DNA of 64,000 nucleotides from Octopus bimaculoides (Eukaryota). Numbering within the stretch: position 1 is the first letter of the stretch; every line of letters starts with the position of its first letter. Under the pieces are notes generated by a model, which was not told the DNA's origin, ran no database searches, and was given only the letters and a program-made list of their open reading frames with translations. This document shows, piece after piece, positions 18,401-54,202 of this stretch. Position numbers and translations under genes: made by a program. The stretch covers positions 92,261,539 through 92,325,538 of the forward strand of contig NC_068988.1 of NCBI RefSeq assembly GCF_001194135.2, written 5' to 3'.

Positions 18401-19459
18401 GAGAAATGGCTAAAATTTGCTCTCACCAGTGACAAAGGAAACATGGAAGTGGTATCACGATCTGCTAGAAATTGCAGCCAAGGTATGTTCTATATACTCC
18501 TAAAATGGCGGTATAGTCGTGGCTGGAATGAATGGCTTTTGATCGTAGGCATGCTCATTCAAGGCGGACCTGACAAAATCTAAAATATCTAGCAGGTATA
18601 ACAATGTTCTGTACACCATAGGTTATTGTTTAGTCCCAGATCTTCTCTTATTGAGAAGTCTTGTGACGAACGCGTTCCAACAGTGAATATCCTGTCTTTT
18701 TTTTTCAGGTATAAGTGTATCTATGTGTTTCAGGTGTTTGTGTATCTATTATCAAATGTGTCCTTCGTCTATTATGCTAGTAGATTTAAGATTTGGCAGC
18801 TATATTTAATAGTAAAGCGACCGCATAGATCACGCATGAACGACCTATATCGAGTAGCGGGAGATCTGGTTCATCGTCCAGCGGACCGCAAGTTGCCCAC
18901 GACTGGCATAGAAGTTTATTCGTTGGCTCACTGCGGATAGCTAACTATATCAGTGGTTGTCACTTCGCTGCGATGTCTCCCTTACAGTTGGAATTCAGCC
19001 CCACCACCACCACCACCACCATTCTTTGCCTCTGTCAGTGTCGTTATCAGACCGCCAATATTGAGCTCGGTGAGTTGGCAGAACCGTGAATGCTTAGCGG
19101 CATTTCGACTTTACGATCTGAGTTCAAATGCCGCCGAGTCAATTTTGCCTTTCATCTTTTCGGGGTCGGTGTAATCGACTTACCACCTCCCTTCGAAATT
19201 GCTGGCCTTGAGCCAAAATTTGAAACCAATATTTTGTGTCACTAGTGAGTAGTTTCGACCTCATCATACGCCTTACGTGAAATAGAAGTAAAATTTCTAT
19301 AAAATCACATCCTTCTTAAAAGAAAGGGATAAAGAGATAAAGACGAGGTGCTTATAGCCGTAATAACTTAGATCATAGGTCTGTTTGATCAGGGTTAAAT
19401 AACAGTAATATCTACATTATATACATGGTTAAATATCGAGTCAACGCTTGAAGCCTCTG

Positions 19460-20048: not shown

Positions 20049-20470
20049 AGGCGGTGAGCTGGCAGAAGTGTTAGCACTCCGGACAAAGATGATTAGCAGC
20101 ATTTCGTCCGGTTTTACGTTCTGAGTTCAGATTCTGCCGAGGTCGACTTTGTCTTTCATCCTTTCGGAGTCGATAAATTCAGTAAGCCAAACTCTGGAGT
20201 CGTAATCAACTAACCCCCTTCCCCTAAACTTTCAGACCTTCTGCCTATAATAGAAAGGATTATTAAGGTGGCGAGCTGGCAGAATCGTTAGCAAGCCGGA
20301 CGAAATACTTAGCGGCATCTCTTCCGGCTCGTTACGTTTCGAGTTCAAACTTTACCGTGATCAACTTTGCCTTTCCTCCTTTCGGAGTCAATGAAATAAG
20401 TGCCAGTTAAATACTGGCTTCGATGTAATCGACTTGCCCCCTCCCTCAAAATTTCAGGCCTTGCCCCGAT
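20049..20470 (+). mobile_element. Tandem pair of tRNA-derived SINE family B (other copies ~1293-1480, 2610-2830 -, 5300-5490, 8915-9135, 9880-10050 -, 19073-19230, 36625-36830, 44020-44200 -, 53715-54180 -)
   Basis: ggcgagctggcagaatcgttagc..ttctgagttcaaat..gtcgactttgcctttcatcctttcgg..gtaatcgactt recurs throughout the window. Confidence 0.9.
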
Positions 20471-24888: not shown

Positions 24889-26653
24889 TGATTTTTTATT
24901 ACCCACAAGGGGCCAACGAAGAGGGGACAATGCAAACATATATGGGAACATATAAAAATGAAAAAAAAAAAATAAATAAATAAATAAACGTATGATATAC
25001 ATGAATGATACAATGAAAATGATAATGAAAATGAGCTACTTGCCCCACCTCAAGCAGCCTCACTTGCTTCCTTTTATCTTTTAAATTCCGAGTCCTTTTA
25101 AATGTTTATACCATATTTCTCGGTCAGCTCCTTGTACTTTATATTGTCTGGTATCATCTTTAAATCACAATTCACCTTCCAACAATTATAACTCCTCTTG
25201 AATTTCAATATTTCATCTTTTTGGCTTTCAGACACCAGGACACATGAGTGCTATCCATCAATGTTTGTCCATCCTATGATCTGGACAAATCTTGCAGTCT
25301 TCCATTTTGTTATCTTATTGAGCAGTTCCTTGTCCACACCTTCAACCTTCATTCACACGAAACAATTTTCAGTGGGAGGGGGAGTTTGTTGATCCTTGTG
25401 TGTTTGTATTTCTTTTTTTCTCTTGCTTTATGTTGGAGAGGAATAGGTGGGTTTGGTGTCTGTGGGGGGAGGGTGGGTCAGAGAGGGTATGGGTGGGGTG
25501 GGTATGGTTTAGGGTTCTACTTCACTCTGTCCTTTCTTCCTTCAGCTACCATCCACTGTTCTTCGCTTCTCTTTTCTTCCTGTTGCACCTTTGGCTCCTT
25601 TCCAACTTCCTCCTGACTTCTCTGCTTCTGTAGAGGGCAGTGTGCTCTAATGTGACCTTTTTGGCTACATTTAAAGCAATGAGGGGTTCTACCCTCCACC
25701 CACACTCTCAACACTACATCTCCAATGGTCACCGTTTCCACCACATTTTCCAGTGTTTCTGCAGTGCTCTGTATGATCAGGTCCAATGTTTGGCTTTTCC
25801 ATACTGAATTTTCTATTTTCATGGCTTGGAGGACAGCTATTTCTTCTTTACTTCCAAGAAGAACAGTCGCCACAACCCAATCCACATCTATTTCTGGTGG
25901 GATTCCTTCCACCCCAATCCTGAAAGTCCTTCTTCCAAGATAAGTGGGTAGACGGACTTTACTGTGGTTACTGCGTGTTCTTTTGCTTTTCCTTCTGACT
26001 TGAAATGAACCACAATTGTTCCATATCTGCTTCCTCTGGCAAGATATGTTATGTCTTGCCAGATGGAGAACAAAGCCTTTTCTATTATTTCTGCCTCAAC
26101 ATTTTCAATTTTCCTTTCTTCCACTGAGTACACCTTATATATTACTGTTTTCTTATCCATTTCTTCCAATACTTTCTGTGGCAGTGACAACTTAATGTCA
26201 CCACCTATCCTACATGCTATTTTCTTGTATTTCTCCATGTTTGTCAGGTCCACCTCCTTTTTTGTGACTTCTGTCACTTTTGCAAAACTTTTCTTCCTTA
26301 AGCACTTGTCCATTCTATCAACTGCTCGTATGAGCTCCTCCTCTGAAGAGGACAATTCGGACCCACTAAAGTCCGAATAGAACATATTTCTTACTGTTGA
26401 CATTGCAGACCCTCCTCAAGGTGGAGAGAAAGCACAACCACAAAACTACTGCAAAGCAGCACAACACACTCCTCAACACAACACACTCCTCAACACAACA
26501 CACTCCTCAACACAACACACTCCCCAACACAACACACTCCTCAACACAACACACTCCTCAACACAACACACTCCTCAACACAACACACTCCTCAACACGA
26601 AACAATCCTCAACACAAAACAATCCTCAACACAAAACAATCCTCACAAAACAA
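24889..26653 (-). mobile_element. Short non-autonomous non-LTR-like retroelement, copy 2 (near full length): 17-bp tandem 5' UTR, Gag-like ORF1 with CCHC knuckle, C-rich spacer, small ORF2, 3' tail
   Basis: ORF1 runs 26403 to 25517 with one frameshift near 25940 and ends VWVEGRTPHCFKCSQKGHIRAHCP (CX2CX4HX4C). ORF2 remnant 25310-25074. 3' end ccccttgtgggtaataaaaaat. No RT or endonuclease. Flanked by copies of a 19-bp target sequence. Confidence 0.8.
26461..26646 (-). repeat. 17-bp tandem array (~11 units, CTCCTCAACACAACACA on +) in the 5' UTR of retroelement copy 2
   Basis: Period 17 read directly (ctcct at 26469, 26486 and onward). Units drift to ...aaacaatcctc at the right end. Confidence 0.9.
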
Positions 26654-33568: not shown

Positions 33569-34497
33569 ATTAATCATATCCTAGGTAATTGCATTATATA
33601 GGTGTTATGCAATACAGAATGTTGGGGGGGGGTGGGACTTCAAAAAGAGTTTCGGGCAGTACACGGTATATCAAATACTTTTTTGAGTCACAACCATTAT
33701 TTCCTTGTTTACGTTGCCTATACAAAAAACAATCTGGCTGAGGCATTACTATATTGAGTCAAACATCACTATATCACGTAATTTTATAATTTATACAAAT
33801 ATATATTTTATTGTTTGAAGATATTGAATAAATATAGATATTTGGAACATTGTTTGCTTAGAAAAGTTAATGACTTTCGTTTTTCGTAAATTAGTAATAT
33901 TCTCTCATTCTGGTTCACGCGTTTTCTTTTGAGTTTACAGCTATAGTAGGAAGGATCGCCTTTATTCTTTTATCTTCTCATTGTTCAAAATGTTTTGTAT
34001 TCTTGTTTCAAAACTATATTTTGTATTCGGTTATTCTGGTTTAAAAACTATATTTCCTATTAATTTGGTCATTCTGGTTTCAAAAAAATTCATATTCTGA
34101 AAATACAACATGACAGAATCAATAATTACGTTAGTTGTTTCCAAGCATTTACCCTCTTAGGATCTTTTAAATTAGCCGTGATTTTTGGCTTATTTTATTA
34201 ATATGTAAATAATTTCTGAGTGTATCAAATATATGAATATATTTATCAAAGCAAATGTATGAACCCACTATTTTACATTTCCGAGATCCAACGGGACGAA
34301 CGTAGCACTGGAGGTCAAAGTAAATGGAAAACTACCCTATTATACATAATTATAACTACTGGATCTTCGTTTTTCAAAGTTAATCCGTTGATATCTTGTT
34401 AAACTGTATGAAATTTTACAGCGTATGGCCCTACTTTGTACTTGCTATTTAATTAAATATTTTAATCAAAGGATGTTTTCATCTAAATGTCTGCAGC

Positions 34498-34848
34498 GCT
34501 TGTTGTTGGCACTCCGTCGAGGGTTCCAGTTGATCCGATCAACGGAACAGCCTGCTCGTGAAATTAACGTGCAAGTGGCTGAGCACTCCACAGACACGTG
34601 TACCCTTAATGTAGTTCTCGGGGATATTCAGTGTGACACAGTGTGACAAGGCCGACCCTTTGAAATACAGGCACAACAGAAACAGGAAGTAAGAGTGAGA
34701 GAAAGTTATGGTGAAAGAGTACAGCAGGGTTCGCCACCATCCCATGCCGGAGCCTCGTGAAGCTTTAGGTGTTTTCGCTCAATAAACACTCACAACGCCC
34801 GGTCTGGGAATCGAAACCGCGATCCTATGACCGCGAGTCCGCTGCCCT
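34498..34848 (-). mobile_element. tRNA-derived SINE family C with 12-bp TSD, ~365 bp upstream of the carbonic anhydrase ATG
   Basis: aatgtctgcagc at 34486-34497 and 34849-34860. Homologous to 59908-60210 (+) and the head at ~56982-57190. Confidence 0.9.
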
Positions 34849-35212
34849 AATGTCTGCAGCATACAAACGATAAATCAAACTCAACAGTAAACTCTATTTC
34901 AATATTTTTTTGGCCAGAGAGTAAAATCAGGAATTCGTCAGCGTCTTTACAGTTATTGGTGAGATCAAAATACTGATTTTTCCGACTACTCCGATCGATA
35001 AATTTGTACTAATACCCCACCATTGTTTACGGTCTACAAGTTTGTTTGATTATTTCATGCATGGCGTTCAGTAACGCGTTCACATTTTGGGGGGTTTTTT
35101 CTGGAAGAAATTGAGAGTTTTTCTCTTTCACTGTCCATAAAAATAATAACTGAAAGTTAGTGTTAACTTGTTTCATATATATATATATATCAGTTTACAC
35201 ATAAATAGATAC

Positions 35213-36094
35213 ATGTACGCTATGTTAATTTTGTTTTTATTATTTTTCAACATGTTCTCTGTCTTTCCTGCCTTCGGCTGGTCCTATGACCATTCCGAGC
35301 TTTGGGCAAACACGTTTTCAAATTGCAATTTCTCTTCTCAAAGCCCTGTCAATATCCAGCTAGCATATACTACACATGTTGACTGGTGGGAAACTCTAGA
35401 GTATTTTAATGAGCGGAACAACAGTAAAGTGGAATATTTTATGTTTATCAGCGAAAGTATTTTGAAAGTACAAGTACATGGGAATTTTGTATTAAATGGC
35501 GAAAGTCTTCGGGCGACTTTTTACACTATTCAGCTCCATTTCCACTGGAGGTATAAGAGTATCACACGTGGATCTGCACATTATATTGATGGCGAAGGAT
35601 TTCCACTCGAAATGCATATTGTTAATAAAAATTTCCAGTACAGCGATTTAACCACTGCAATACTTCATCCGGATGGTATAGCAATAATAGCATTTTTCTT
35701 TGAAATAGAACCTCTTGACAACCCCATGCTCAGTAAAATTATTGATGTTCTTCCTGATTTAGGTTCAAAATCAATGCTACTGAAAGACTTCAGTTTAAGT
35801 GGATTAATAGACGAAGGACTCAAAGAAACTGATTTCTTTCAGTACAACGGTAGCATACCAGTCCCTCCTTGCAATGAATGTGTTATCTGGATCATTGTTA
35901 AGAAACCTCTTTCAATATCACGAAGACAACTGGAGGAAATCTGGAAATTGAGCGAGAGAGATAATATGCTTGGTACTAACATCCGTCCAGTTCAACCACT
36001 TTATGAGCGATTAGTTTGGACTACTTTTTCAGCGGCTGATAAAGCCATTAGTTCAGCTTGTTGTCTGTTATTTCTTACAATGTTATGTATTTAA
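35213..36094 (+). CDS. Alpha-carbonic anhydrase family protein, single coding exon, signal peptide and probable GPI-anchor signal (293 aa from ATG 35213)
   Basis: Uninterrupted ORF with alpha-CA motifs in order: WSY, C..QSPVNI, QLHFHW (His94/His96, nt 35537 and 35543), GSAH, LEMHIV (Glu117/His119), YNGSIPVPPC (Cys203), VIW, NIRPVQPL. The N-terminus is hydrophobic (MYAMLILFLLFFNMFSVFPAFG). The C-terminus has small residues then a hydrophobic tail (SAADKAISSACCLLFLTMLCI). The track's TTG start at 35168 runs through a TA microsatellite, so ATG 35213 is more plausible. AATAAA at 36410. Confidence 0.95.
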   Translation: MYAMLILFLLFFNMFSVFPAFGWSYDHSELWANTFSNCNFSSQSPVNIQLAYTTHVDWWETLEYFNERNNSKVEYFMFISESILKVQVHGNFVLNGESLRATFYTIQLHFHWRYKSITRGSAHYIDGEGFPLEMHIVNKNFQYSDLTTAILHPDGIAIIAFFFEIEPLDNPMLSKIIDVLPDLGSKSMLLKDFSLSGLIDEGLKETDFFQYNGSIPVPPCNECVIWIIVKKPLSISRRQLEEIWKLSERDNMLGTNIRPVQPLYERLVWTTFSAADKAISSACCLLFLTMLCI

Positions 36095-38929
36095 CTTGAA
36101 AATATTTAATATCTTTGCTTCTTGTGGGAGAAGGAAAATGAAAAAAGAATAACTTTTTTTTTTTTTACATTGGGCATGTTAAAAAAAAAATCATTTTAGG
36201 TTTTGAAAAAATTTTTCCATTCTTTGATGATGCCTTTTGAATTTCCTTCTTCTTCAGTACAGCCATACGAATTGTACTTATAATGGAAAACTATATTTGT
36301 ATTTTGTTCAATCCAGAAATTGTTATTCGTAGTCAAAGCTGTGTATAATTACTAAATTGGTGTAATTTGAAGTTATTTTTGTTGTTAGTTTTATCGCTAA
36401 TTGTAAAGTAATAAAAAGATATTAAAGGAAGAGATTTGCAATCGAGATATCATTAATCAAGATGTTAATGAAGATTGAAATATTTCTGGGACCAGTTACT
36501 TTTTTCTATCAGTTATAACTTTCTCCCCCCCCTTTTTTAAATGCTATTTCATAATAAGTGTATGTGAGGCATGAATCTTAGGTTATAAGAACTTATTTCA
36601 ACTTTCAATATTAATCCTTATGTTAGGGCGGCGAGCTGCCGGGCAAAATGCTTAGTGGCATTTCATCCGTCTCTACGTTCTGATTTCAAATTTCGCCGAC
36701 GTCCACTTTGCCTTTCATCACCCTTTCAGAGGCAATAAAATGAGTACCAGCTGAAAGCTGAGGTCGAAGTAATCAATTTACCGACTCCCTAGAAATTGCT
36801 GGCTTTTTGCCAAAATGTGAGACCAATATTAATCCTAATGGACTATTAGAAAACCTTACACCGTCAGAAGACACAGTTTAAAACTTGACCAGAATCCAAA
36901 GAAACTAGTCACTGTTATTTTACGTTAATAAAATATTAGTTACGGAAGTTCACATAGATAAGTGCACGTATGCCAATAGCAAGAGTTACAATATTTGTCA
37001 TATTGTCTGAAATGTTTTTTTTTTATGGAAGCTTCCATTTTAGGAAGCTCCAACTGCGATATATTAAAACTAAAATAGTTGCTGGGACTGGTCCTGAGAA
37101 CAGTGTAGAGGAACCACGTAATCTCCAATAGCAATAAAACAGTCTATTTCCCTCTTATGATAACTTTTTATAATATACTCATGCATACCTTCGTCATATT
37201 CTCAGTATGAAGCTAGTGCAGAATTTCACCTATGGAATCTCTTTTGAACCAGGAAATACTTCAGCTTCTAACAACTAGTAACCCTCTGCAAAGTTCGAGT
37301 GAGACTCATAATGGATTAGTCTTGTTTCACATTCTGGACTCCCTGCCAAAGAAAAACCTCTTGATTGATTAGCATTAATTCTTTCAGAAGCACACACTAA
37401 CCTTTAGTTCAAAGACATCCTGTTTTCTTTCTCTGTCTGTCTCTCTCTCTCTCTCTCTCTTCCATGACTACTATTGTAGCATCATATCCTTGGATATGTC
37501 TAGTCTCTAGTCAAAACCCGCCCACGTCAGCGAAACTGAGGACAGGATTGTGGAGTGAGAGCTAAGCATAGCATATGAAGGAGGAAATGTGAGAAAGAGA
37601 AGCAATGTGGAGGTGTAGATTGGTTTGTTGGGGTAGGGTGAGGGGGCTAACAGATAGCAATAATATAGAGAGAGACAGGGCGTGTGGGTAGAACGCAGGT
37701 TGGAGGCAAGCAGAGATCAATGATACAGTGACACAGGGCCAAGAGGACAGGATTGGGGAGTGGGAGGTAAGCATAGAGTATGAAGTGGAAATGTGAGGAA
37801 GAGAAGNNNNNNNNNNAGTATGAAGTGGAAATGTGAGGAAGAGAAGAGATGTTGAGACATAGTTTGGTGTGTTGTGGTAGAGTGTGTGAGAAGTTTTCTT
37901 GTTAAGCATGGGTGGGACACACAGCGCTTCTAGAACTCAGTTTTGCTGACGTGGGTGGGTTTTCTCAAGAACTTCATATTGCCAGACATCATGGTCCATT
38001 GTCATTTCCTCTGTGAGGCCCAACTTCCTGAGATTTATTATTTTACTAAATTCTTCATTGTTTTGAAAATTGAAAACAAAGGCAATGTATTATCTCAACA
38101 AAAATATGGTCACAAAAAGCTTCATTATTAGTATAAATTATCACCATGGGAACTTGAACAACAATCATAATGTTTGTCAGAGTTCCACCTTGGTTATAAA
38201 TGTGTTGTTTTTTTTTAATGAGATTTTTGCTATTCAATGATACCATTTAACTAATATTTGTTTTTATAATTCAAGATACATTTATTTCTTCAGCACATTA
38301 TATTATAAAAGTGAAGAGTTTAGATTGATGGATAAATCAGCTTGTAATATGGTACCTGTTCATGACGAGGTATAGTCAAGTCATCGTCATTGGTAGAATT
38401 TAGCTTGAAATGAAATGAAATGTTGCATGTGTTCTCTTCAGTTTTATTTAGTCACTATTTACAAATTCTTCCTTGAATGTTATTGAGGATGTTTCAAGTT
38501 TATTATATTTACTGAGTTTTAAATTAAAATATTTTTCACTTTGAATTCTTTCCGTTATTTTTGTTATTGTTTAATCTTTTGAATAGTCTAAAAACTGTCA
38601 TTTATTTTTAATTAATAATTTAAAGCCTGCAATATTCATAGTTAAATAGTTTCAAAAATGTCTATGTGACACTTCTACATTTAACAACCATTGTTTCATA
38701 TGAAATTCACTGTTAGGATTAAATTGGATAAAAGACAATATTTTTTTAATAATTCCTTATTTTGCTTGGCTATTTCTAATTAATAGCTTTGGAATGGAAA
38801 ATAAATATTAGAAATTATTATTGATAATAGTAGAAACCTTACAGTATGGTCAGATTAATTGTGTCAGATGATAAGGTTGGTGTCTTGTTCCCTCCGTGTA
38901 TTTGTCACCCTTCAATACATAATCTAAAG

Positions 38930-41338
38930 CAGTGGTTCTCAAACTGGAGTATGTAGTCCCCTAGGGCAGGGGTTTTCAAACTTTTTGACTTGCGGACCCC
39001 TTTATATTTCAGACTTTACCCTTATAAACACTTATGAAATTTATACATAAATATTTGCTAAAAAATAACATACACTTTTACATTTATTTATTTAACAGTA
39101 TTTAACGAATAGGTTTATTGTCAATTAAAAGATTTCGATTAAAAAACATGTATAAAATCAAATTGCCCATAAAAAGTATTTGCTGTCCACAGACCTCCCT
39201 GTCTTGTCCTTGCGGACCCCCTGTGGTCCGTGAACCACAGTTTGAAAACCCCTGCCCTAGGGGACCACAAAGTGATTTTAGGGGGACTGCAAAGAGATGC
39301 TGAAGTATCATGAAAACAGGTAGCTTGAGGCAATTAAAGAATTTCAAGACTTCCAATTTTTTGCATGCTATCATCCTTTTTTGTCATTGACTTCAAACTC
39401 CATACCACTCATACACAATAATTTGCTAATCACACTCGTTGTACAACAAATGTGATTGGTTGATGGAAAAAATGCATGTATAATGTTTGATTGTGCATAT
39501 GCTGTCACTATTCTACACTCACATGACTCACCATTCCACTACTGCTACCCATGCATTTGCATATCTCTCACTGTCATTTTCCTCACCGGTGCATGTTCCC
39601 ACATGACCTTGCCCTTTGCCAGTCACCCATTCGCATCCTGCATGTTGGCAGGGCTTTATAAGCCATGATTGTTTTTCATGGCAATGTGTTCTGACAGAAC
39701 TGTCATCTCAATGGTTATCAATTTACGGAGGTTTATCTACAAAAAAAACGTTCACATAAGCTTTGGATTTCTTCCACAATTAATAATGAGAAGTAAGCTT
39801 TATTGCTAATTGGTATACCCAAAAGTTGCTGCAATAAGGCATATATGCACACCTATAGTATATGATAAATGCGAAATAAATATTCAATGTAGTTATATTA
39901 AATTTGTTTACTGAATTTTATCTTTTTTTACATAATGTCTCTCAAAAAAAAATATGTATTTGATAAATCTTATTTGAAATTCAATTTTACTGTGATAAAA
40001 TCTGGTGGAGAAGAGAAACCACAATGTGTTTTGTGCTCTGAGATTTTGGCATCTACTTCACTAAAGCCCAGCAAGTTAAAGAAACAAAGCATCCCAGTTC
40101 AATAGAGATGTTGACTTCTTCAGACATGAAACCGACAGATTGACGACATCCAGACTTGATGACACAGGAATGTTTTTGCTAGACATTACAACTAGTTTGA
40201 AAGCATTCTACGAGGTTTCAAGGAAAATAGCTGTTGCCAAAAAGCCCCACAATATCAGCAAAGAGTTGATATTTCTTTGCTGCAAAGATACCATATCGAA
40301 TGTGCTGAGAAGTTCTAAACTTCAGAAGCTGAAGCATGTCTCTCTCTCTCTCTCAAATGATGCTGTAAGCAGGTGAATACCATTAGCTGTCTGATAACAT
40401 TCTGTCACAGGTGGCCTCGAAGATTCATAATTCACTTTTTAACTTTTTCGTGATTCAGTTTGATGAAATGGTGGATGTTGCCAACTTAGCCCAATTTTGC
40501 ATCTATGTACATTATGTCCATAAAAATCACCTGGAAGATGAATTCCTGTTTTGCAAAACCTTCAGCACCAAAACAACAGCAAGGGAAATATTTAACAAAG
40601 TGGACAAATTTTTTGAGGCACAGGATATCAACTGAGAGCATGTCACTGGTGTGCACCAATGGTACTCTGGCAATGCTTGGTTGCCGTTTTGGTTTTCAAA
40701 CTTTGGTGAAAGAAAAATCCCCAGCTGCTATTGGTACACACTGCACAATTCATCCACAAATACTAATGGTGAAAACCATTCCTGATGATTTGAAAAATGT
40801 TCTGGATTATGTGATTACAGTGGTGAACTTCATCAAAGCAAATGCATCCAACTCTCATCTGTTTGCCAAGTTGTGCAAAGAAAGTGATTCTGACTTCAAA
40901 ATGCTTCTGTTGCACTCATAAGTGAGATAGCTTTTGAGACAAAAAAACAATGAAGAGTGTCTTCCTTCTAGGAAAAGAAGTCAACCAGATTTGCATGCTA
41001 AATTCGCTGATGTTCATTTTATGATCTGCTTGGCATTTTTGGTGGATATATTCAGGTTAGTGAATGCCGTCAACCTTTCACTGCAAGGGAACGATGTAAC
41101 CATGCTTCATTCTTATAAAAAAATAACTGATTACAAAATGAAGCTTGAACTTTGGCACCCAAAGCTGGATAGAAAGAACTTTGCATCATTTCCTCAACTA
41201 AACATGTTTATTGATGAAAACGAGCTTCAAGTTGATGGTGATATCGTTAAACTCCTGAAACAGCACATGTCAATACTAGGCAGAGAAATATCTTTTTATT
41301 TTTCTGATCTTCACGACTTTGACAAATACTGCCTCTTT

Positions 41339-41340
<2 letters not shown>
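38930..41340 (+). mobile_element. hAT (Buster/Charlie-type) transposon remnant with pseudogenised transposase, right end missing
   Basis: Left TIR cagtggttctcaaac preceded by atcTAaag. From ATG 39935: YLKFNFT..EEKPQCVLCSEILASTSLKPSKL..KHP (BED finger), then IQFDEMVDVANLAQ, THCTIH, VVNFIKAN, LAFLVDIF..NLSLQG, with many stops and frameshifts. Confidence 0.9.
38967..39254. mobile_element. Buster-type hAT MITE nested in the left subterminal region of the hAT element
   Basis: TIRs caggggttttcaaac / gtttgaaaacccctg. Perfect 8-bp TSD ccctaggg at 38959-38966 and 39255-39262. Confidence 0.95.
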
Positions 41341-41373
<33 letters not shown>

Positions 41374-42734
41374 ATTGATATTTTATGTAGGCATAGCAAT
41401 ATTAATAACCTGGATTTAGAGCTCACCATAGATATACTTCAGAACAAAGTGTCCATTGAGTAGAGAGCAATAATAAGGAATTGGAATAAAGTGCACTTCA
41501 TGTTTGAAGCTCTGGTGAAGCTATAAGGTGATACTCTAGCATTCAACTATTGAATGCATTGCATGTTGTGGCAGAAACAGATGTAAGCTAATGAAGTTCA
41601 TAACATAATTGTTTATACCTTTGTCCTTCTAATTCCTTTTAAATATATAATTTTACATCTATATGCACACAACTAGGCCCTACACTCAATCTCCTCCTTT
41701 CAAACCTTCGCCACTCCTTCATCTTGCTACTATACAGCCCTCCATCATTCTTTTAAGCATGGCACTGTTCAGCCACTATAATTTTATGAGAGCAGAACTG
41801 TGTATTTTGTACCCCTGGAATCATTTCCTTGTGTCACCCACTCCCCGTTCTCAATATCATCTCATCCCACTTTATTCTCATAGTCGTCAACACTTCTGTG
41901 CCACCTGTTATTTCTACTTTTCTCCTGAGCTACATTTCATAACTGCAATATCTCATTCTTAACACTCTCTCATATCTACAACTAATTACACCTCTTTGTT
42001 CACCACTCACTATAACTGCTTTTAAGTATCTCTGATCTCCATCTCTGTCATTGTACTTCTCTCTCTCTCTCTCCCCACAAACACACTCCTTCACTTACCA
42101 ACTCCAACATATCAACCCCACTGCCTTTTCATATTTACTTACAGCTTTTTTTTTTATTCTACTGCTCTCCACTTTTTCTATACTGCCACATATCACCGCC
42201 TCCCTCCCGAGCCTCTTCTATTTCATATCCCTTCCCCGCTCGACTCATATTTACCTTTTACCATACTGTCACTCTTATTCACCATTCACTATATTCACCT
42301 TTACTCCTATCTCTAACCAATTGTCCTGCTCTTCTCACACTCTTGCGAACTTATCTACATAACCTTTTCTACTTTCTGACTCCTTATCATCACCGTTTTG
42401 TCTCTCCAGCTACTCCTGTTCACCATTATATTATGATATTGCTAGCTACCTTGCTTAAACATCTAATAATTCTATCAATCCACTGTCCAGGATTGGTACT
42501 ATGAGGTAGTGAGTAAAAATCTATGATGATGATGATATGATTGTGAGTGTTCGTTTAGTAGTTTCTGAATACAAAGCAGACATAGAGACAGAAACCTCTC
42601 TCATTCTCTCTCACACACATACATATATTATAGACTGATCTTGACTACTTCACTTCCTAGTCATTATGTCTTGCTGGACTTGTAGTGATTGTTGCTTTTA
42701 TATAGGCCCGGATCAGACTACAGATTACTATCTC

Positions 42735-44384: not shown

Positions 44385-46203
44385 ATGGAGAGGGTCATAG
44401 CCCAACTAATTAGGGAGAGAGTCAGTGTAGATGAGATGCAGTTTGGGTTCATGCCAGGGAAAAGCACCACTGATGCTATATTTCTGGTAAGACAGCTGCA
44501 GGAGAAATACCTAGCCAAAGATAAACCTCTGTACCTGGCTTTCTGGGTAGAAGTAGGGGCCCACCAAGGTTCAGTCTTCAGCCCCCTCCTATTTATCATA
44601 GTCCTCCAGGCAATAACAGAGGAATTCAAGACAGGATGCCCCTGGGAACTCCTCTATGCTGATGACCTTGCCCTAATTGCTGAGTCACTATCAAAACTAG
44701 AGGAGAAGTTTCAGGTGTGGAAGCAAGGATTAGAATCGAAGGGCCTTAGAGTCAACCTAGCTAAAACCAAAGTCCTAATAAGTAGGAAGGTAGACAAACC
44801 ACAAATCCCTTCAGGTAGATCGCCCTGCTCGATCTGTAGAAAAGGCGTAGGTAGAAACTCTATAAGATGTACCCAGTGTAAGCTATGGACACATAAGAGG
44901 TGCAGCAATATCAAAGGAAGGCTAACTGGGAAGATAGTTTTTGTATGTGGCAGGGGCTCAGGAGCAATAAACACTGAAAATGTGCAGAGAACAACTTCTG
45001 CCACATTCCAGTGAGAAAAACTAGAAGTAGTTGATAGTTTCCGTTACCTAGGTGACCAAGTCAGTAGCGGGGGTGGGGTTCACTGAAAGTGTAGCTGCTA
45101 GAATAAGAATAGCCTGGGCAAAGTTCAGAGAGCTCTTACCTCTGCTGGCAAAAAAGGGCCTCTTGCTCAGAGTAAAAAGTAGACTGTATGACACATGTAT
45201 ACGAACAGCCATGCTACATGGCAGTGAAATATGGGCCGTGACTGCTGAAGACATGCATAAGCTTGCAAGAAATGAAGCCAGTATGCTCCACTGGATGTGT
45301 AATGTCAGTGTGCATACTCAACAGAGTGTAAGTATCTTGAGAGAAAAGTTGGACCTAAGAAGCATCAATTGTGGTGTGCAAGAGAGATGATTGCGCTGGT
45401 ATGGACATGTGGCAAGAATGGATGAGGATAGCTGTGTGAAAAAGTGCCACCCTAGTGGTTGAGGGAACCTGTGGAAGAGGTAGGCTCAGGAAGACCTGGG
45501 ATGAGGTGGTGAAGCACAATCTTTGAACATTAGGCCTCACCAAAGCAATGACTAGTGACCGAGACCTTTGGAAATATGGTGTGCTTGAGAAGACCCGGCA
45601 AGCCAAGTGAGACCATAACCCATGGTCTATGCCAGGGGTGTAACCAGCCCACTTATGCGTACCTTTCCTTCATTGGACACTAAACTCTGTTTGCAAAGAC
45701 CTGTTGAGGCAAGTGAAATTGAAATCGAAATCAAATTTCATGACTGGCATCTGTGCTAGTGGAGTGCTAACCGCACCATCTGTGCATGATCGTTGTCAGA
45801 GCAGCTGACTGGCTTCTGTGCCGGTGGCATGTAAAAAGCATCATTCGAGCATGATCGTTTCCAGCGTTGCCTTACTGGCACTTGTGCCAGTATGTGAAAA
45901 AATATTCAAGCGAGGTTGTTGCCAGTGCTGCTGGACTGGCTCGTGTGCAGGTGGCACATAAAAAACACCATTTGAGTGTGGCCATTGCCAGTACTGCCTG
46001 ACTGGCCTTCGTGCCAGTGGCATGTAAAAGCACCCACTACACTCTCGGAGTGGTTTACATTAGGAAGGGCATCCAGCTGTAGAAACTCTGCCAGATCAGA
46101 TTGGAGCCTGGTGCAGCCATCTGGTTCACCAGTCCTCAGTCAAATTGTCCAACCCATGCCAGCATGGAAAGCGGACATTAAATGATGACGATGATGATGA
46201 TGA
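44385..46203 (+). mobile_element. RTE-clade LINE, 5'-truncated, internal deletion in RT, ~60-65-bp tandem repeats in the 3' UTR and (GAT)n tail
   Basis: QFGFMPGKSTTDAIF..RQLQEK, HQGSVFSPLLF, LLYADDL, LRVNLAKTK, MLHGSEIW; later WYGHV-like coding. In-frame deletion at ~44543 (LAF|WVEVG). Tail gatgacgatgatgatgatgat. Confidence 0.95.
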
Positions 46204-46358: not shown

Positions 46359-47535
46359 TTTTTTCTGCCTCCAATCTCTGTTTGTAGATGGGGCAGTCTT
46401 TTTTTAAGTGTTGGTCGCTGCTGCACAGGTAGCACTTTGGCCTTCGCCCCTCTACAGCAACGTGAATTCTTGTGCCATCCGGCAAGTTTATTGAGTCGGG
46501 TATGGAATTTATGATATCTTGTTCAATTTGAACAAGGAGCTGCATGCCCACACCCGACCAGCTTTGTTTTTGCATTTTGTGTACCTCCAGAATAGTGGCA
46601 GTCTCTTCAATGTCAAAGAGCACAGCTGCCACTATGTTCAAGTTTTATTTTGGTTACGCGCCGACCAAGGTATGTCAGCACGAGTAATAAATCTTCCGCC
46701 TTCAGGGGTGTCGGTGAGTGCTGGATTGCATCCTCTTCTGTTGGGAAGCACACTTCCACCATTCCAAAGCGCTTCCCTTTAGTAACGAAACTTTTGTGGC
46801 CCCATATGGGCTTGAGTGCTATCTCCAACCTCTGTGGAGTAGCATTTTCTATTTTATGGTACTTTGTGTTATATATCTTGTAAATGATTGTACGTTTGTT
46901 GGTGTCGTAGATTAATGCTTGTGGAGTGTTAAGGAAAACATTATTTCCGTCTTTCCTTAACAACTCCTTTGCATCCTTCATTTCTGCCATTGTAACTTGG
47001 ATTTCTTCTGAGCTCTGCTTAGCTGCAATGGCTACTGGTTTTGGTTTTGGTGTTGTCTTCTTTGTTCTTCATTGTTCTGTTCTTCTCTTCCTCCTTCTCC
47101 GGTGTAGGAGCAATGGTGGAGGTAAGAGCTGGGAAGTGCAGATCCGAAAGTCGGTTGAAATATTGGAATCAGGAGCGCTGCACATGGCAGAATGTTCCTC
47201 AACATTTATCTCTTTGCCTTTTATGGCATGAGATGGGCGGGATGACATGCGACTTGACATGTCGTCCTTTGGTGGAGGGTGTGATGTGGAAAGAAGGGAA
47301 CAGCTCACTCTCTTCAAAGACATTTTTCAAAATTGATATGTGTGAAAATGGAAATTTCAAAATGTTCAAATGAAAATTTTGCTCCTAAATGGGGGAAATT
47401 TTGCCTAACCGACTAGCTCCGTAAGAACCTAGTCGGCTTGGCTGCACAAATATATAAAATATTACAGGTTTTAAAAGATTTACATGCAAAAATGACAACA
47501 ACTTACAGAGCTTCGGGAGACACGTCCGTCTGCTT
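46354..47535 (-). mobile_element. Third, more distant Gag-like ORF1 retroelement (3'-truncated, disrupted)
   Basis: ORF pieces 47323-47069, 46990-46613 and 46641-46354 align with copy 2 ORF1 (TIIYKIYN / TVIYKVYS; TYLGRR; VAVEGRRPKCYLCSSDQHLKKDCP). Confidence 0.75.
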
Positions 47536-53709: not shown

Positions 53710-54202
53710 CTTTTCTGAAATTTGTGAGGAGGGGGCTAGTCGATTACATTGAAATTTGTGAGGAAGGGGCTAGTCGATTACATTGATCCCAATGTGAGAC
53801 TGGTGCTTATTTATCGACCCTGAAAGGATGAAAGGCAAAGTTGACCTCGGCAGAATTTGAACTCAGAACGTGAAGACAAACGGAATGCTGCTATGCATTT
53901 TGCCCGGCATGCTAACAATTCTGCCAGCTCATTGCCTTAATAATAATAATGATGATAATAATAATAATGATGATAATAATAATCCTTTCTACTTAAGGCA
54001 CAAGGCCTGAAATTTGTGGGGAGGGGATAAATCAATCACTTTGACTCCAGAGTTTCACTGGTACTTAATTTATCGACCCCGAAAGTTGACCTTGGTGGAA
54101 TTTGAACTCAGAATGTAGTGATGGGGGAAATACCACTAAGCATGTCATCCAGCATACTAACGATTGTCAGCTCACCACCTTAACAATAATAATAATAATA
54201 AT

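What the first reader, a model, noticed from the sequence alone, without database searches (positions are those of the whole stretch)
35537..35872. Carbonic anhydrase with intact zinc triad but both gatekeeper residues replaced
Seen: His94/96/119, Gln92, Glu117, Trp209, Arg246 and the Cys23-Cys203 pair are kept. GSEH is GSAH (Glu106 to Ala, GCA at 35576). GSLTTPPC is GSIPVPPC (Thr199 to Pro, CCA at 35858; Thr200 to Val). No His sits at the His64 shuttle position (FISES). Established: the Glu106-Thr199 network orients the zinc hydroxide, and Thr199 substitutions in human CA II cut activity by roughly two orders of magnitude. Classical inactive CARPs instead lose zinc His ligands. Inference: a different route to a non-canonical CA, such as a surface metal or anion binder, an altered-substrate enzyme or a scaffold. 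Each change is one base from the canonical codon, so early pseudogenisation is possible, but the ORF, signal peptide and GPI signal are intact.
Basis: partly seen in the sequence, partly recalled or inferred. Interest (0 to 1): 0.7.

Follow-up and report, generated by a model that had tools for sequence, protein, structure and literature searches.

The report
Fast-evolving gatekeeper-less carbonic anhydrase-like gene
An intronless, secreted carbonic-anhydrase look-alike keeps its three zinc-binding histidines but has lost most other residues needed to hydrate CO2; it is real, expressed and kept open by selection, and is most likely a lineage-restricted non-enzymatic binding protein, which is interesting but not unprecedented.

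Summary
Window 35222-36094 (+) is a single-exon alpha-carbonic anhydrase ORF (Pfam PF00194, E=3.6e-56; AF2 pLDDT 91; TM 0.85-0.9 to human CA II). It keeps Q92, H94, H96, E117, H119, W209, R246 and Cys23/Cys203. It has E106A, T199P, T200V and H64S, and also N61I, N62S, G63E and N67K.

Contigs from five independent runs show no difference in the CDS. Among 215 His-triad CA domains of the 148 closest relatives, none has a non-acidic 106 or a non-hydroxyl 199.

The only orthologue found is 58% identical in protein and 80% in DNA. It shares A106, P199, V200 and S64, so these changes are old. It has H96Y, so the intact triad is not a conserved requirement.

Pairwise dN/dS is 1.07, yet the ORF is maintained: P(no stop)=6e-4, and there is 1 in-frame indel against 15 expected. 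dN is below neutral at family-conserved sites and above neutral at variable sites.

One RNA library covers 34930-38466 unspliced at depth 71-95; most other libraries have nothing.

The best reading is a rapidly evolving, secreted, essentially acatalytic CA-related protein. The GPI signal is not conserved. Coral AmiCA7/SpiCA7 show the same pattern, so novelty is modest.

The parts
34930..38466 (.). Transcribed region seen in one RNA library (X6), collinear with the genome with no splice. It corresponds to a 5' leader of about 290 nt, the CDS, and a 3' part of about 2.4 kb. Contig ends fall at repeats, so the true ends and the strand are not established.
   Evidence: X6 contig of 2533 nt, word depth 71, running from 34930. 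X6 contig of 996 nt, depth 94.9, running to 38466, with zero depth beyond 38478.
35222..36094 (+). Single-exon CDS of the CA-like protein (290 aa plus stop). An alternative upstream ATG at 35213 gives the 293-aa form.
   Evidence: ATG 35222 is conserved in L001, whereas 35213 is GTG there. A 293-aa form exists in NCBI nr.
35222..35278 (+). Hydrophobic N-terminal signal-peptide-like segment MLILFLLFFNMFSVFPAFG. The mature protein would start at WSYDH.
   Evidence: mean Kyte-Doolittle (KD) hydropathy 2.1; this is the most constrained window (dN/dS 0.21); low-pLDDT helix at residues 2-14. No dedicated predictor was available.
35297..36025 (+). Alpha-carbonic anhydrase domain.
   Evidence: PF00194, E=3.6e-56, profile positions 4-253 of 254. 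AF2 pLDDT 91. Foldseek TM 0.85-0.90 to hCA II structures.
35324..35326 (+). Cys23 (TGC), disulfide partner of Cys203; typical of extracellular alpha-CAs.
35447..35467 (+). Hydrophilic-wall and proton-shuttle segment ISESILK, replacing NNGH(T/A)xQ: N61I, N62S, G63E, H64S, N67K.
   Evidence: All except position 65 are identical in the orthologue.
35531..35545 (+). QLHFH: Q92, H94 and H96 (zinc ligands and second shell) kept. H96 is Tyr in the orthologue.
35576..35578 (+). GCA = Ala at the Glu106 gatekeeper position (GSAH instead of GSEH).
   Evidence: Conserved in the orthologue. No read variant.
35609..35617 (+). EMH: E117 and H119 kept.
35858..35863 (+). CCA GTC = Pro199 and Val200 (GSIPVPPC instead of GSLTTPPC).
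   Evidence: Conserved in the orthologue. No read variant.
35870..35872 (+). Cys203 (TGC).
36026..36091 (+). C-terminal tail FSAADKAISSACCLLFLTMLCI: small residues followed by an 11-residue hydrophobic end. This is a possible GPI signal in this species only.
   Evidence: KD 2.84 for the last 11 aa; a 2-nt indel puts the orthologue's tail in another frame (KD 1.35).
34450..34850 (-). tRNA-derived SINE directly upstream of the transcript (boundaries approximate).
   Evidence: sequence read directly, with a B-box-like GGTTTCGATTCCC on the minus strand; very high depth and many loose ends at 34850.
36637..36820 (.). Dispersed repeat inside the 3' part of the transcript.
   Evidence: other copies in the window; depth spikes.

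Best explanation
The locus encodes a lineage-restricted, single-exon, secreted alpha-carbonic-anhydrase-fold glycoprotein that has given up efficient CO2 hydration. It now most likely works as a binding or scaffold protein. It is an independently arisen, secreted 'CA-related protein' of the gatekeeper-loss type.

Shown:
- The fold and its core are under purifying selection.
- The hydrophilic catalytic half of the cavity is replaced: H64, N62, N67, E106, T199 and T200. The derived states are shared by both known orthologues.
- The reading frame is actively maintained.
- Surface and variable positions evolve faster than neutral.
- Transcription is strong in one library and absent from most others.

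Inferred:
- Pro199 removes both the hydroxyl that orients the zinc-bound hydroxide and the backbone NH that positions substrate. Ala106 removes the hydroxyl's hydrogen-bond partner. There is no proton shuttle. Any residual hydratase activity should therefore be at least 1e3-1e5-fold below a normal CA.
- In this species zinc is probably still bound, because both the first and second shells are intact. The orthologue's H96Y suggests the conserved function does not need the canonical site.
- The rapid, partly positive evolution and the narrow expression suggest a role in species-specific recognition (reproductive, secretory or defence tissue).
- The intronless structure suggests a retrogene origin.
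For: Family and fold.

Catalytic residues. Among 215 His-triad domains, none lacks both gatekeepers.

Sequence verified in five independent runs.

Orthologue P0002/L001 shares S64, A106, P199 and V200 but has Y96.

ORF maintenance:
- 167 substitutions would give about 7.5 stop codons, so P(no stop)=6e-4.
- About 15 indels are expected from the flank rate, against one in-frame 6-nt indel observed (P=4e-6).

Constraint on the fold:
- WIN-ORTH identity is 74% at family-conserved columns and 43% at variable columns (Mann-Whitney p=5e-7).
- dN is 0.13 at conserved codons (below the neutral 0.23, p=0.002) and 0.365 at variable codons (above neutral, p=0.0015).

Expression:
- X6 depth is 71-95 across 34930-38466, unspliced.
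- Runs X21 and X22 of the same study hold 0.00 of the words, as do ten other RNA runs.
- X25 and X26 gave 0 reads. X19 and X20 showed traces.

Mutational effects in hCA II:
- T199A is about 100x slower and binds anions 20x more tightly; E106Q is about 1000x slower; E106D is near wild type (PMC3688778).
- T199P/C206S has been crystallised with altered ligand binding (1LG5/1LGD).

Secreted CARPs are recurrently reinvented under little constraint in cnidarians (PMC4981384).
Against: - Overall dN/dS is 1.07, and CDS substitution identity (79.6%) equals that of the flanks (80%). On that measure alone the gene looks neutral.
- Only two species' sequences exist, so positive selection rests on a modest class-wise test.
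- No binding partner, tissue or protein-level evidence is known.
- The strand of the RNA could not be determined, because contigs carry no direction.
- The zinc site with its second shell (Q92, E117, N244) and the hydrophobic CO2 pocket (V121, V207, W209) are intact in this species. This would be unexpected if metal chemistry were wholly irrelevant.
- No activity assay exists.
Confidence: 0.6

Rival explanations
1. It is still a zinc-dependent protein in this species. It would be either a very slow or altered-substrate hydrolase, or a zinc-centred bicarbonate/anion-binding (sensor-like) surface protein. Removing the Thr199 gatekeeper would turn a fast-turnover site into a tight anion-binding site.
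For: - The His triad, second-shell Q92/E117/N244 and hydrophobic-pocket residues V121/V207/W209 are all kept in the window protein.
- T199A raises thiocyanate and bicarbonate affinity about 20-fold (PMC3688778).
- T199P/C206S hCA II was crystallised with bicarbonate bound (1LGD).
- The cavity-lining positions are 70% identical between the orthologues, against 58% overall.
Against: - The orthologue has Tyr at position 96, so a canonical three-His zinc site is not conserved.
- V143 and L198 of the CO2 pocket vary (I/T and I/M).
- No shuttle residue is present.
- There is no biochemical data.
Confidence: 0.2
2. It is a gene in decay: a former enzyme, possibly a retrocopy, that lost function and is drifting. 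The open frame and the transcript would be residual.
For: - dN/dS is 1.07, and CDS divergence equals flank divergence.
- There is a C-terminal frameshift between the species.
- A zinc ligand is lost in the orthologue.
- No further orthologues turned up among 5.8 billion proteins.
- Expression was seen in only one library.
Against: - The frame is open in both lineages despite 20% divergence (P=6e-4 for stops, P=4e-6 for indels).
- There is significant purifying selection at family-conserved codons, and a strong correlation with family conservation.
- RNA depth in X6 is high.
- There are no CDS differences among five runs.
Confidence: 0.12
3. The substitutions are sequencing or assembly errors, or are corrected at the RNA level by A-to-I editing.
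For: Each key change is one base away from the canonical codon.
Against: - Five independent runs, including the RNA contig, agree with the window at every CDS base.
- The orthologue carries the same residues.
- A-to-I editing of GCA or CCA can only change the synonymous third base, so it cannot give Glu or Thr (sequence logic).
Confidence: 0.01

Closest known systems
Classical carbonic anhydrase-related proteins (CARP VIII, X, XI and invertebrate CARPs)
   Same: Alpha-CA fold retained without efficient CO2 hydration. They act, where known, as binding proteins. CA X and XI are secreted.
   Different: CARPs are defined by loss of one or more zinc His ligands (PMC4981384 and PMC5437132). From my own knowledge, not checked here, vertebrate CARPs keep Glu106 and Thr199 and are ancient and slowly evolving. 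This protein keeps all three His, loses Glu106, Thr199, Thr200 and His64, is restricted to a narrow lineage and evolves at about the neutral rate overall. Identity to any other CA is at most 37-42% over the matched stretches.
Coral AmiCA7 / SpiCA7 (scleractinian-specific secreted alpha-CA-like isoform)
   Same: Reported to contain the three zinc-binding histidines but to 'clearly lack the gatekeeper residues'. Secreted, lineage-specific, activity unknown (PMC4981384). This is the same residue pattern as here.
   Different: The lineage is independent (cnidarian). That isoform has a 13-residue insertion upstream of the shuttle position.
Engineered human CA II T199P/C206S (PDB 1LG5, 1LG6, 1LGD) and the T199A and E106Q mutants
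   Same: The same Pro at position 199. 1LG5 is among the top structural matches of the model. T199A is about 100x slower with 20x tighter anion binding, and E106Q is about 1000x slower (PMC3688778).
   Different: These are laboratory single-site mutants in an otherwise optimal enzyme that keeps E106, H64 and T200. The natural protein combines all of these losses. From memory, not checked: the T199P variant was reported to lose roughly three orders of magnitude in efficiency. The primary paper is not held.
Extracellular and GPI-anchored alpha-CAs (CA IV / CA XV type)
   Same: N-terminal signal sequence, the Cys23-Cys203 disulfide pair, N-glycosylation sequons and a short hydrophobic C-terminal tail. 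A fish 'carbonic anhydrase 4b' is among the best named hits (33% identity).
   Different: Those are active enzymes with the full catalytic set. Here the tail is short and is not conserved in the orthologue.
CA-like binding modules (RPTP gamma/zeta CA domain, vaccinia D8)
   Same: A CA fold reused as an extracellular ligand-binding surface. This is from my own knowledge and was not tested here.
   Different: Those are domains of larger proteins that have lost zinc ligands. No sequence relationship beyond the family level was seen here.

Membership tests
Alpha-carbonic anhydrase family (PF00194) | Significant match to the family profile over the whole domain | tested here: met
   E=3.6e-56, 191 bits against a cut-off of 27, profile positions 4-253 of 254.
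Alpha-carbonic anhydrase family (PF00194) | CA fold (central twisted beta-sheet) | tested here: met
   pLDDT 91.1, pTM 0.86. TM (target-normalised) 0.85-0.90, 379 PDB matches at E<=1e-3; all 50 listed are carbonic anhydrases.
Catalytically competent alpha-CA | Three zinc-ligand histidines (94, 96, 119) | tested here: met
   Not met in the orthologue (H96Y).
Catalytically competent alpha-CA | Gatekeeper pair Glu106 and Thr199 | tested here: not met
   Ala106 and Pro199. The pair is kept in 213 of 215 His-triad relatives.
Catalytically competent alpha-CA | Proton shuttle (His64 or equivalent) and hydrophilic wall (N62, N67, T200) | tested here: not met
   S64, S62, K67 and V200.
Catalytically competent alpha-CA | Measured CO2 hydration or esterase activity and zinc content | not testable with these tools
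   Needs recombinant protein.
Classical CARP (CA VIII/X/XI type) | Loss of at least one zinc-binding histidine | tested here: not met
   The window protein keeps all three. Only the orthologue has lost H96.
Classical CARP (CA VIII/X/XI type) | Orthology with, or close similarity to, the conserved CARP clade | tested here: inconclusive
   No relative other than P0002 exceeds about 37-42% identity over the matched stretches. The named best hits are ordinary or multi-domain CAs. No phylogeny was built.
GPI-anchored extracellular CA | Cleavable N-terminal signal peptide | tested here: inconclusive
   A hydrophobic 19-residue N-terminus that is conserved, with the lowest dN/dS. No signal-peptide predictor was available.
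GPI-anchored extracellular CA | C-terminal omega site, spacer and hydrophobic tail, conserved among orthologues | tested here: inconclusive
   In the window the pattern is S-A-A, a 7-residue spacer and an 11 hydrophobic residues. The tail is frameshifted and far less hydrophobic in the orthologue. No GPI predictor or PI-PLC test was available.
Processed or unitary pseudogene | Disabling mutations, or neutral accumulation of stops and indels | tested here: not met
   P(no stop)=6e-4, and one in-frame indel against about 15 expected; dN is below neutral at conserved codons.
Retrogene | Intronless copy with a collinear transcript | tested here: met
   RNA contigs are collinear with the genome from 34930 to 38466. 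The ORF is single.
Retrogene | Identifiable intron-containing parent gene, poly(A) remnant and target-site duplications | not testable with these tools
   No close paralogue exists in the protein collections. The rest of the genome cannot be searched here.

The most novel reading that the evidence does not exclude
A naturally evolved extracellular zinc site on a CA scaffold from which the gatekeepers and the proton shuttle have been stripped. It would bind bicarbonate, CO2 or another small anion instead of turning it over. In effect it would be a tissue-specific surface or secreted carbonate-chemistry sensor or chaperone in an octopod, with its outer surface under positive selection. The orthologue's Tyr96 would then be a fourth-ligand variation rather than a loss.
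Probability: 0.1. Interest if true: 0.6.

Novelty: new member of a known kind. Interest (0 to 1): 0.33.

Why it matters
If the reading is right, animals make 'dead' carbonic anhydrases by a second route besides loss of zinc ligands: removal of the Glu106-Thr199 gatekeeper network. That route has now been seen independently in a mollusc and in corals.

The gene is a compact natural experiment. It is one exon of 290 codons, and it carries the equivalent of the classic T199P, E106A, T200V and H64S mutations together. It could therefore be used to ask three things:
- what the CA scaffold is selected for when catalysis is gone;
- whether zinc is retained;
- whether activity can be restored by back-mutation.

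In practice it warns that annotation pipelines and surveys that count 'active' CAs by the His triad alone will misclassify such proteins. It does not open a long-standing question, and the function is still unknown.

Tried and rejected
**Search for more orthologues**
- Three searches of the 5.8-billion-protein collection and one exhaustive HMMER search of 1.84 billion representatives found only P0002.
- Conservation and selection tests therefore rest on one species pair.

**Where the orthologue comes from**
- The look-up of encoding contigs for P0001 had no record.

**Read laying**
- The transcript start, any upstream exon and the transcribed strand are therefore undetermined.
- The first attempt on 35200-36100 laid no X6 or X7 contigs, although the index lists them. 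A wider stretch worked.

**Tissue of expression**
- Run and sample names are coded, and literature searches found nothing on this gene.

**Other points**
- The primary T199P/C206S paper is not held.
- Sequencing error and RNA-editing rescue were considered and rejected.
- A recent single-base pseudogenising hit was considered and rejected, because both changes are shared with the orthologue.
- A tandem CA array was considered and rejected: tblastn finds no second copy in the window, and DNA depth is single-copy.
- ARAGORN finds no tRNA in the window; the upstream tRNA-like element is a SINE.
- I could not verify the organism.
Full report
**What is there**

The finding lies inside a single open reading frame, 35168-36094 on the + strand. 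The methionines at 35213 and 35222 give proteins of 293 and 290 residues. It matches the eukaryotic-type carbonic anhydrase family over the whole domain: PF00194, E=3.6e-56, profile positions 4-253 of 254. It also aligns end to end with human CA II structures.

An AlphaFold2 model built on a 52-sequence alignment is confident (mean pLDDT 91.1, pTM 0.86). It superposes on CA II structures with a target-normalised TM-score of 0.85-0.90, and the engineered T199P mutant 1LG5 is among the top matches. tblastn finds no second copy in the window.

**Checking the observation**

Kept:
- Q92 (CAG 35531), H94 (CAT 35537), H96 (CAC 35543)
- E117 (GAA 35609), H119 (CAT 35615)
- W209, R246, and the Cys23/Cys203 pair (TGC 35324, TGC 35870)

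Replaced:
- position 106 is Ala (GCA 35576)
- position 199 is Pro (CCA 35858)
- position 200 is Val (GTC 35861)
- position 64 is Ser (AGT 35456)

The alignment to 56 single-domain relatives shows that more of the hydrophilic half of the cavity has gone as well: N61I, N62S, G63E and N67K. G98R and R227W are also replaced.

The sequence is not an error. DNA contigs of three samples (X1, X3, X5) are identical to the window from 34930 to 36560. X7 and the RNA contig of X6 differ only outside the CDS. A-to-I editing could not restore Glu or Thr, because the only A in GCA and in CCA is the synonymous third base.

The pattern is rare. In the 148 closest relatives from a library of 1.84 billion representatives, I located 252 CA domains with all five key positions aligned. 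Of these, 215 keep the His triad. Of those, 213 have Glu106 and Thr199, and the two exceptions are conservative (Asp106, Ser199). Conversely, 32 of the 37 domains that have lost a zinc histidine still keep both gatekeepers. The window protein therefore reverses the usual order of loss.

**The orthologue**

Three word-indexed searches of 5.8 billion proteins and the exhaustive search found only one close relative. This is P0002, encoded on a 1,872-nt Logan contig (L001). The next best proteins are at most about 37-42% identical over the matched stretches. They are ordinary or multi-domain CAs of gastropods, bivalves and crustaceans.

L001 aligns with the window from 34914 to 36820, flanks included, so it is the orthologous locus of another species. 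P0002 is 58% identical in protein. It has the same Ser64, Ala106, Pro199 and Val200, but Tyr at position 96.

Two conclusions follow. First, the gatekeeper losses predate the split of the two species and are not recent single-base accidents. Second, the intact zinc triad that made the finding attractive is not a conserved feature of the gene.

The ATG at 35213 is GTG in L001, so ATG 35222 is the conserved start. A 2-nt indel near 36050 puts the two C-terminal tails in different frames.

**Is it a functional gene?**

Substitution identity is 79.6% in the CDS and 80% in both flanks. Nei-Gojobori gives dN=0.242, dS=0.227 and dN/dS=1.07. On that figure alone the gene would pass for neutral. Three independent tests say otherwise.

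1. Stop codons. Placing the observed 167 substitutions at random, with the observed spectrum, creates 7.3-7.7 stop codons on average. The frame stays open in only 0.06-0.08% of trials.
2. Indels. The flanks carry 14 indels in 758 nt. That predicts about 15 in the 824 nt of CDS before the tail, yet there is one, and it is 6 nt long (Poisson P=4e-6).
3. Site heterogeneity that tracks the family.
   - Identity between the two orthologues is 74% in the third of columns most conserved among other CAs, 59% in the middle third and 43% in the most variable third (Mann-Whitney p=5e-7).
   - Class-wise, dN is 0.13 at conserved codons, significantly below the neutral rate of 0.23 (p=0.002).
   - At variable codons dN is 0.365, significantly above neutral (p=0.0015).

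The overall ratio of 1 is therefore an average of purifying selection on the fold and accelerated change elsewhere, probably driven by positive selection. The most constrained stretches are:
- the signal sequence;
- GSAHYIDGxGFPLEMHI;
- DNxMLSKIID;
- GSxPVPPCxECVIWI;
- PLSISRRQLEEIWKLS;
- TNIRPVQPL.

These include both remodelled active-site loops.

**Expression**

One library labelled as probable RNA (X6, 51 Mb of contigs) holds all sampled words of the CDS. Laid on the window, it gives a 2,533-nt contig at word depth 71 from 34930 onward, and a 996-nt contig at depth 94.9 that ends at 38466, with nothing beyond.

The coverage is collinear with the genome, so the transcript is unspliced across at least 3.5 kb. 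Contig ends coincide with a SINE (34850), a (CT)n run (about 37440-37460) and an unremarkable site (38466). True ends and strand are therefore unknown.

A genome-wide DNA contamination at that depth is incompatible with an assembly of only 51 Mb and with the abrupt drop to zero. Two other libraries of the same study and ten further RNA runs hold none of the words. Two 2026 RNA runs gave no read on the CDS in about 1.9 Gb sampled each. Two runs have single low-depth fragments. Expression is thus strong but narrowly restricted. The tissue could not be identified because run names are coded.

**Localisation**

The N-terminus MLILFLLFFNMFSVFPAFG is hydrophobic, conserved and followed by the start of the CA domain. 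The Cys23-Cys203 pair and N-glycosylation sequons are typical of extracellular CAs. There are 3 sequons here and 6 in the orthologue, mostly at different positions.

The window's tail (SAA, DKAISSA, CCLLFLTMLCI) has the layout of a GPI signal with a short hydrophobic end. The orthologue's frameshifted tail is much less hydrophobic. Secretion is therefore likely. GPI anchoring is possible in this species but is not a conserved property. No dedicated predictor was available.

**Mechanistic reading**

In human CA II the Thr199 hydroxyl accepts a hydrogen bond from the zinc-bound hydroxide and donates one to Glu106. Reported effects of mutations there are:
- T199A is about 100 times slower and binds thiocyanate and bicarbonate about 20 times more tightly;
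- E106Q loses about 1000-fold;
- E106D is nearly normal (PMC3688778).

T199P/C206S has been crystallised with bicarbonate, thiocyanate and mercaptoethanol in non-native binding modes (1LG5, 1LGD). From memory, its efficiency loss is about three orders of magnitude; the paper is not held.

Proline removes the backbone NH as well as the hydroxyl. Here it is combined with Ala106, Val200, Ser64, Ser62 and Lys67. I infer that CO2 hydration is negligible.

The first and second zinc shells and part of the hydrophobic pocket survive in this species, so zinc is probably still bound. Because the orthologue has Tyr96, I rank 'binding or scaffold protein that no longer depends on catalysis' (0.6) above 'zinc-centred anion binder or residual enzyme' (0.2) and 'gene in decay' (0.12).

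Rapid, partly adaptive evolution of a secreted protein with narrow expression is the signature of reproductive, secretory-gland or defence proteins. The intronless structure suggests a retrogene. Both points are inferences.

**Comparison with what is known**

Classical CARPs are defined by loss of zinc histidines (PMC4981384, PMC5437132). This protein fails that criterion, so I do not file it as a classical CARP, although it probably works like one.

The same paper on cnidarian CAs describes a scleractinian-specific secreted isoform (AmiCA7/SpiCA7). It has all three histidines but 'clearly lacked the gatekeeper residues'. The paper also describes a CARP with Pro in place of Thr199, and argues for recurrent reinvention of secreted CARPs under little structural constraint. 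The octopod-type gene described here is an independent example of that kind.

A 293-aa protein record for it already exists in public databases, but I found no paper that discusses it.

**Verdict**

It is a non-canonical CA reached by gatekeeper loss, and it is not a pseudogene.
- The interpretation overstates the significance of the intact triad and of the GPI signal.
- It is a new member of a sparsely documented kind and of moderate interest.
- Its function, tissue and metal content are still open.

Noticed in passing
window c. 34450-34850 (- strand): A tRNA-derived SINE lies directly upstream of the CA-like transcript. Its tRNA-like head (B-box-like GGTTTCGATTCCC) ends at about 34850. K-mer depth exceeds 1e4 in RNA run X6 and 1e6 in X7, and hundreds of reads diverge at 34850. 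ARAGORN calls no tRNA.
   Followed up: partly
window 36637-36820; also 53800-54085 (-), 19171-19219, 20095-20184: A dispersed repeat sits inside the 3' part of the transcript. It is also present at the end of the orthologous contig L001, with depth spikes in all runs.
   Followed up: no
window 37777-37816: A 10-N gap (37807-37816) is preceded by a 30-nt duplicate. The X6 contig joins 37776 directly to 37817, so this is probably an assembly scaffolding artefact with no missing sequence.
   Followed up: partly
window 44385-45390 (+): ORFs of a decayed retroelement: a reverse-transcriptase fragment (RVT_1, E=2e-15) followed by a PHD/C1-like zinc-finger stretch. The adjacent ORF 45052-45390 has no Pfam match.
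   Followed up: partly
window 25517-26403 (-) and 46613-46990 (-): Gag-like ORFs, one with a weak CCHC zinc-knuckle hit below the Pfam cut-off. The 46613-46990 ORF resembles the 25888-26403 ORF in sequence motifs (KIENV/KIENA, FKSEG/FPTEE). These are probably two copies of one retroelement family.
   Followed up: no
window 36045-36094 vs L001: A 2-nt indel shifts the C-terminal tail frame between the two species. The DNA after the indel (CTTACAATGTTATGTATTTAACTTG) is 24 of 25 bases identical, yet it is read in different frames.
   Followed up: partly
window 35175-35195: A (TA)n microsatellite lies in the 5' leader, 20-30 nt before the start codons. It is shorter in the orthologue, and it causes spurious joints in read laying.
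   Followed up: no
window 40505-41419 (+): Two adjacent ORFs (138 and 161 aa) have protein-like composition but no Pfam match. They are possibly remnants of a DNA-transposon gene.
   Followed up: no
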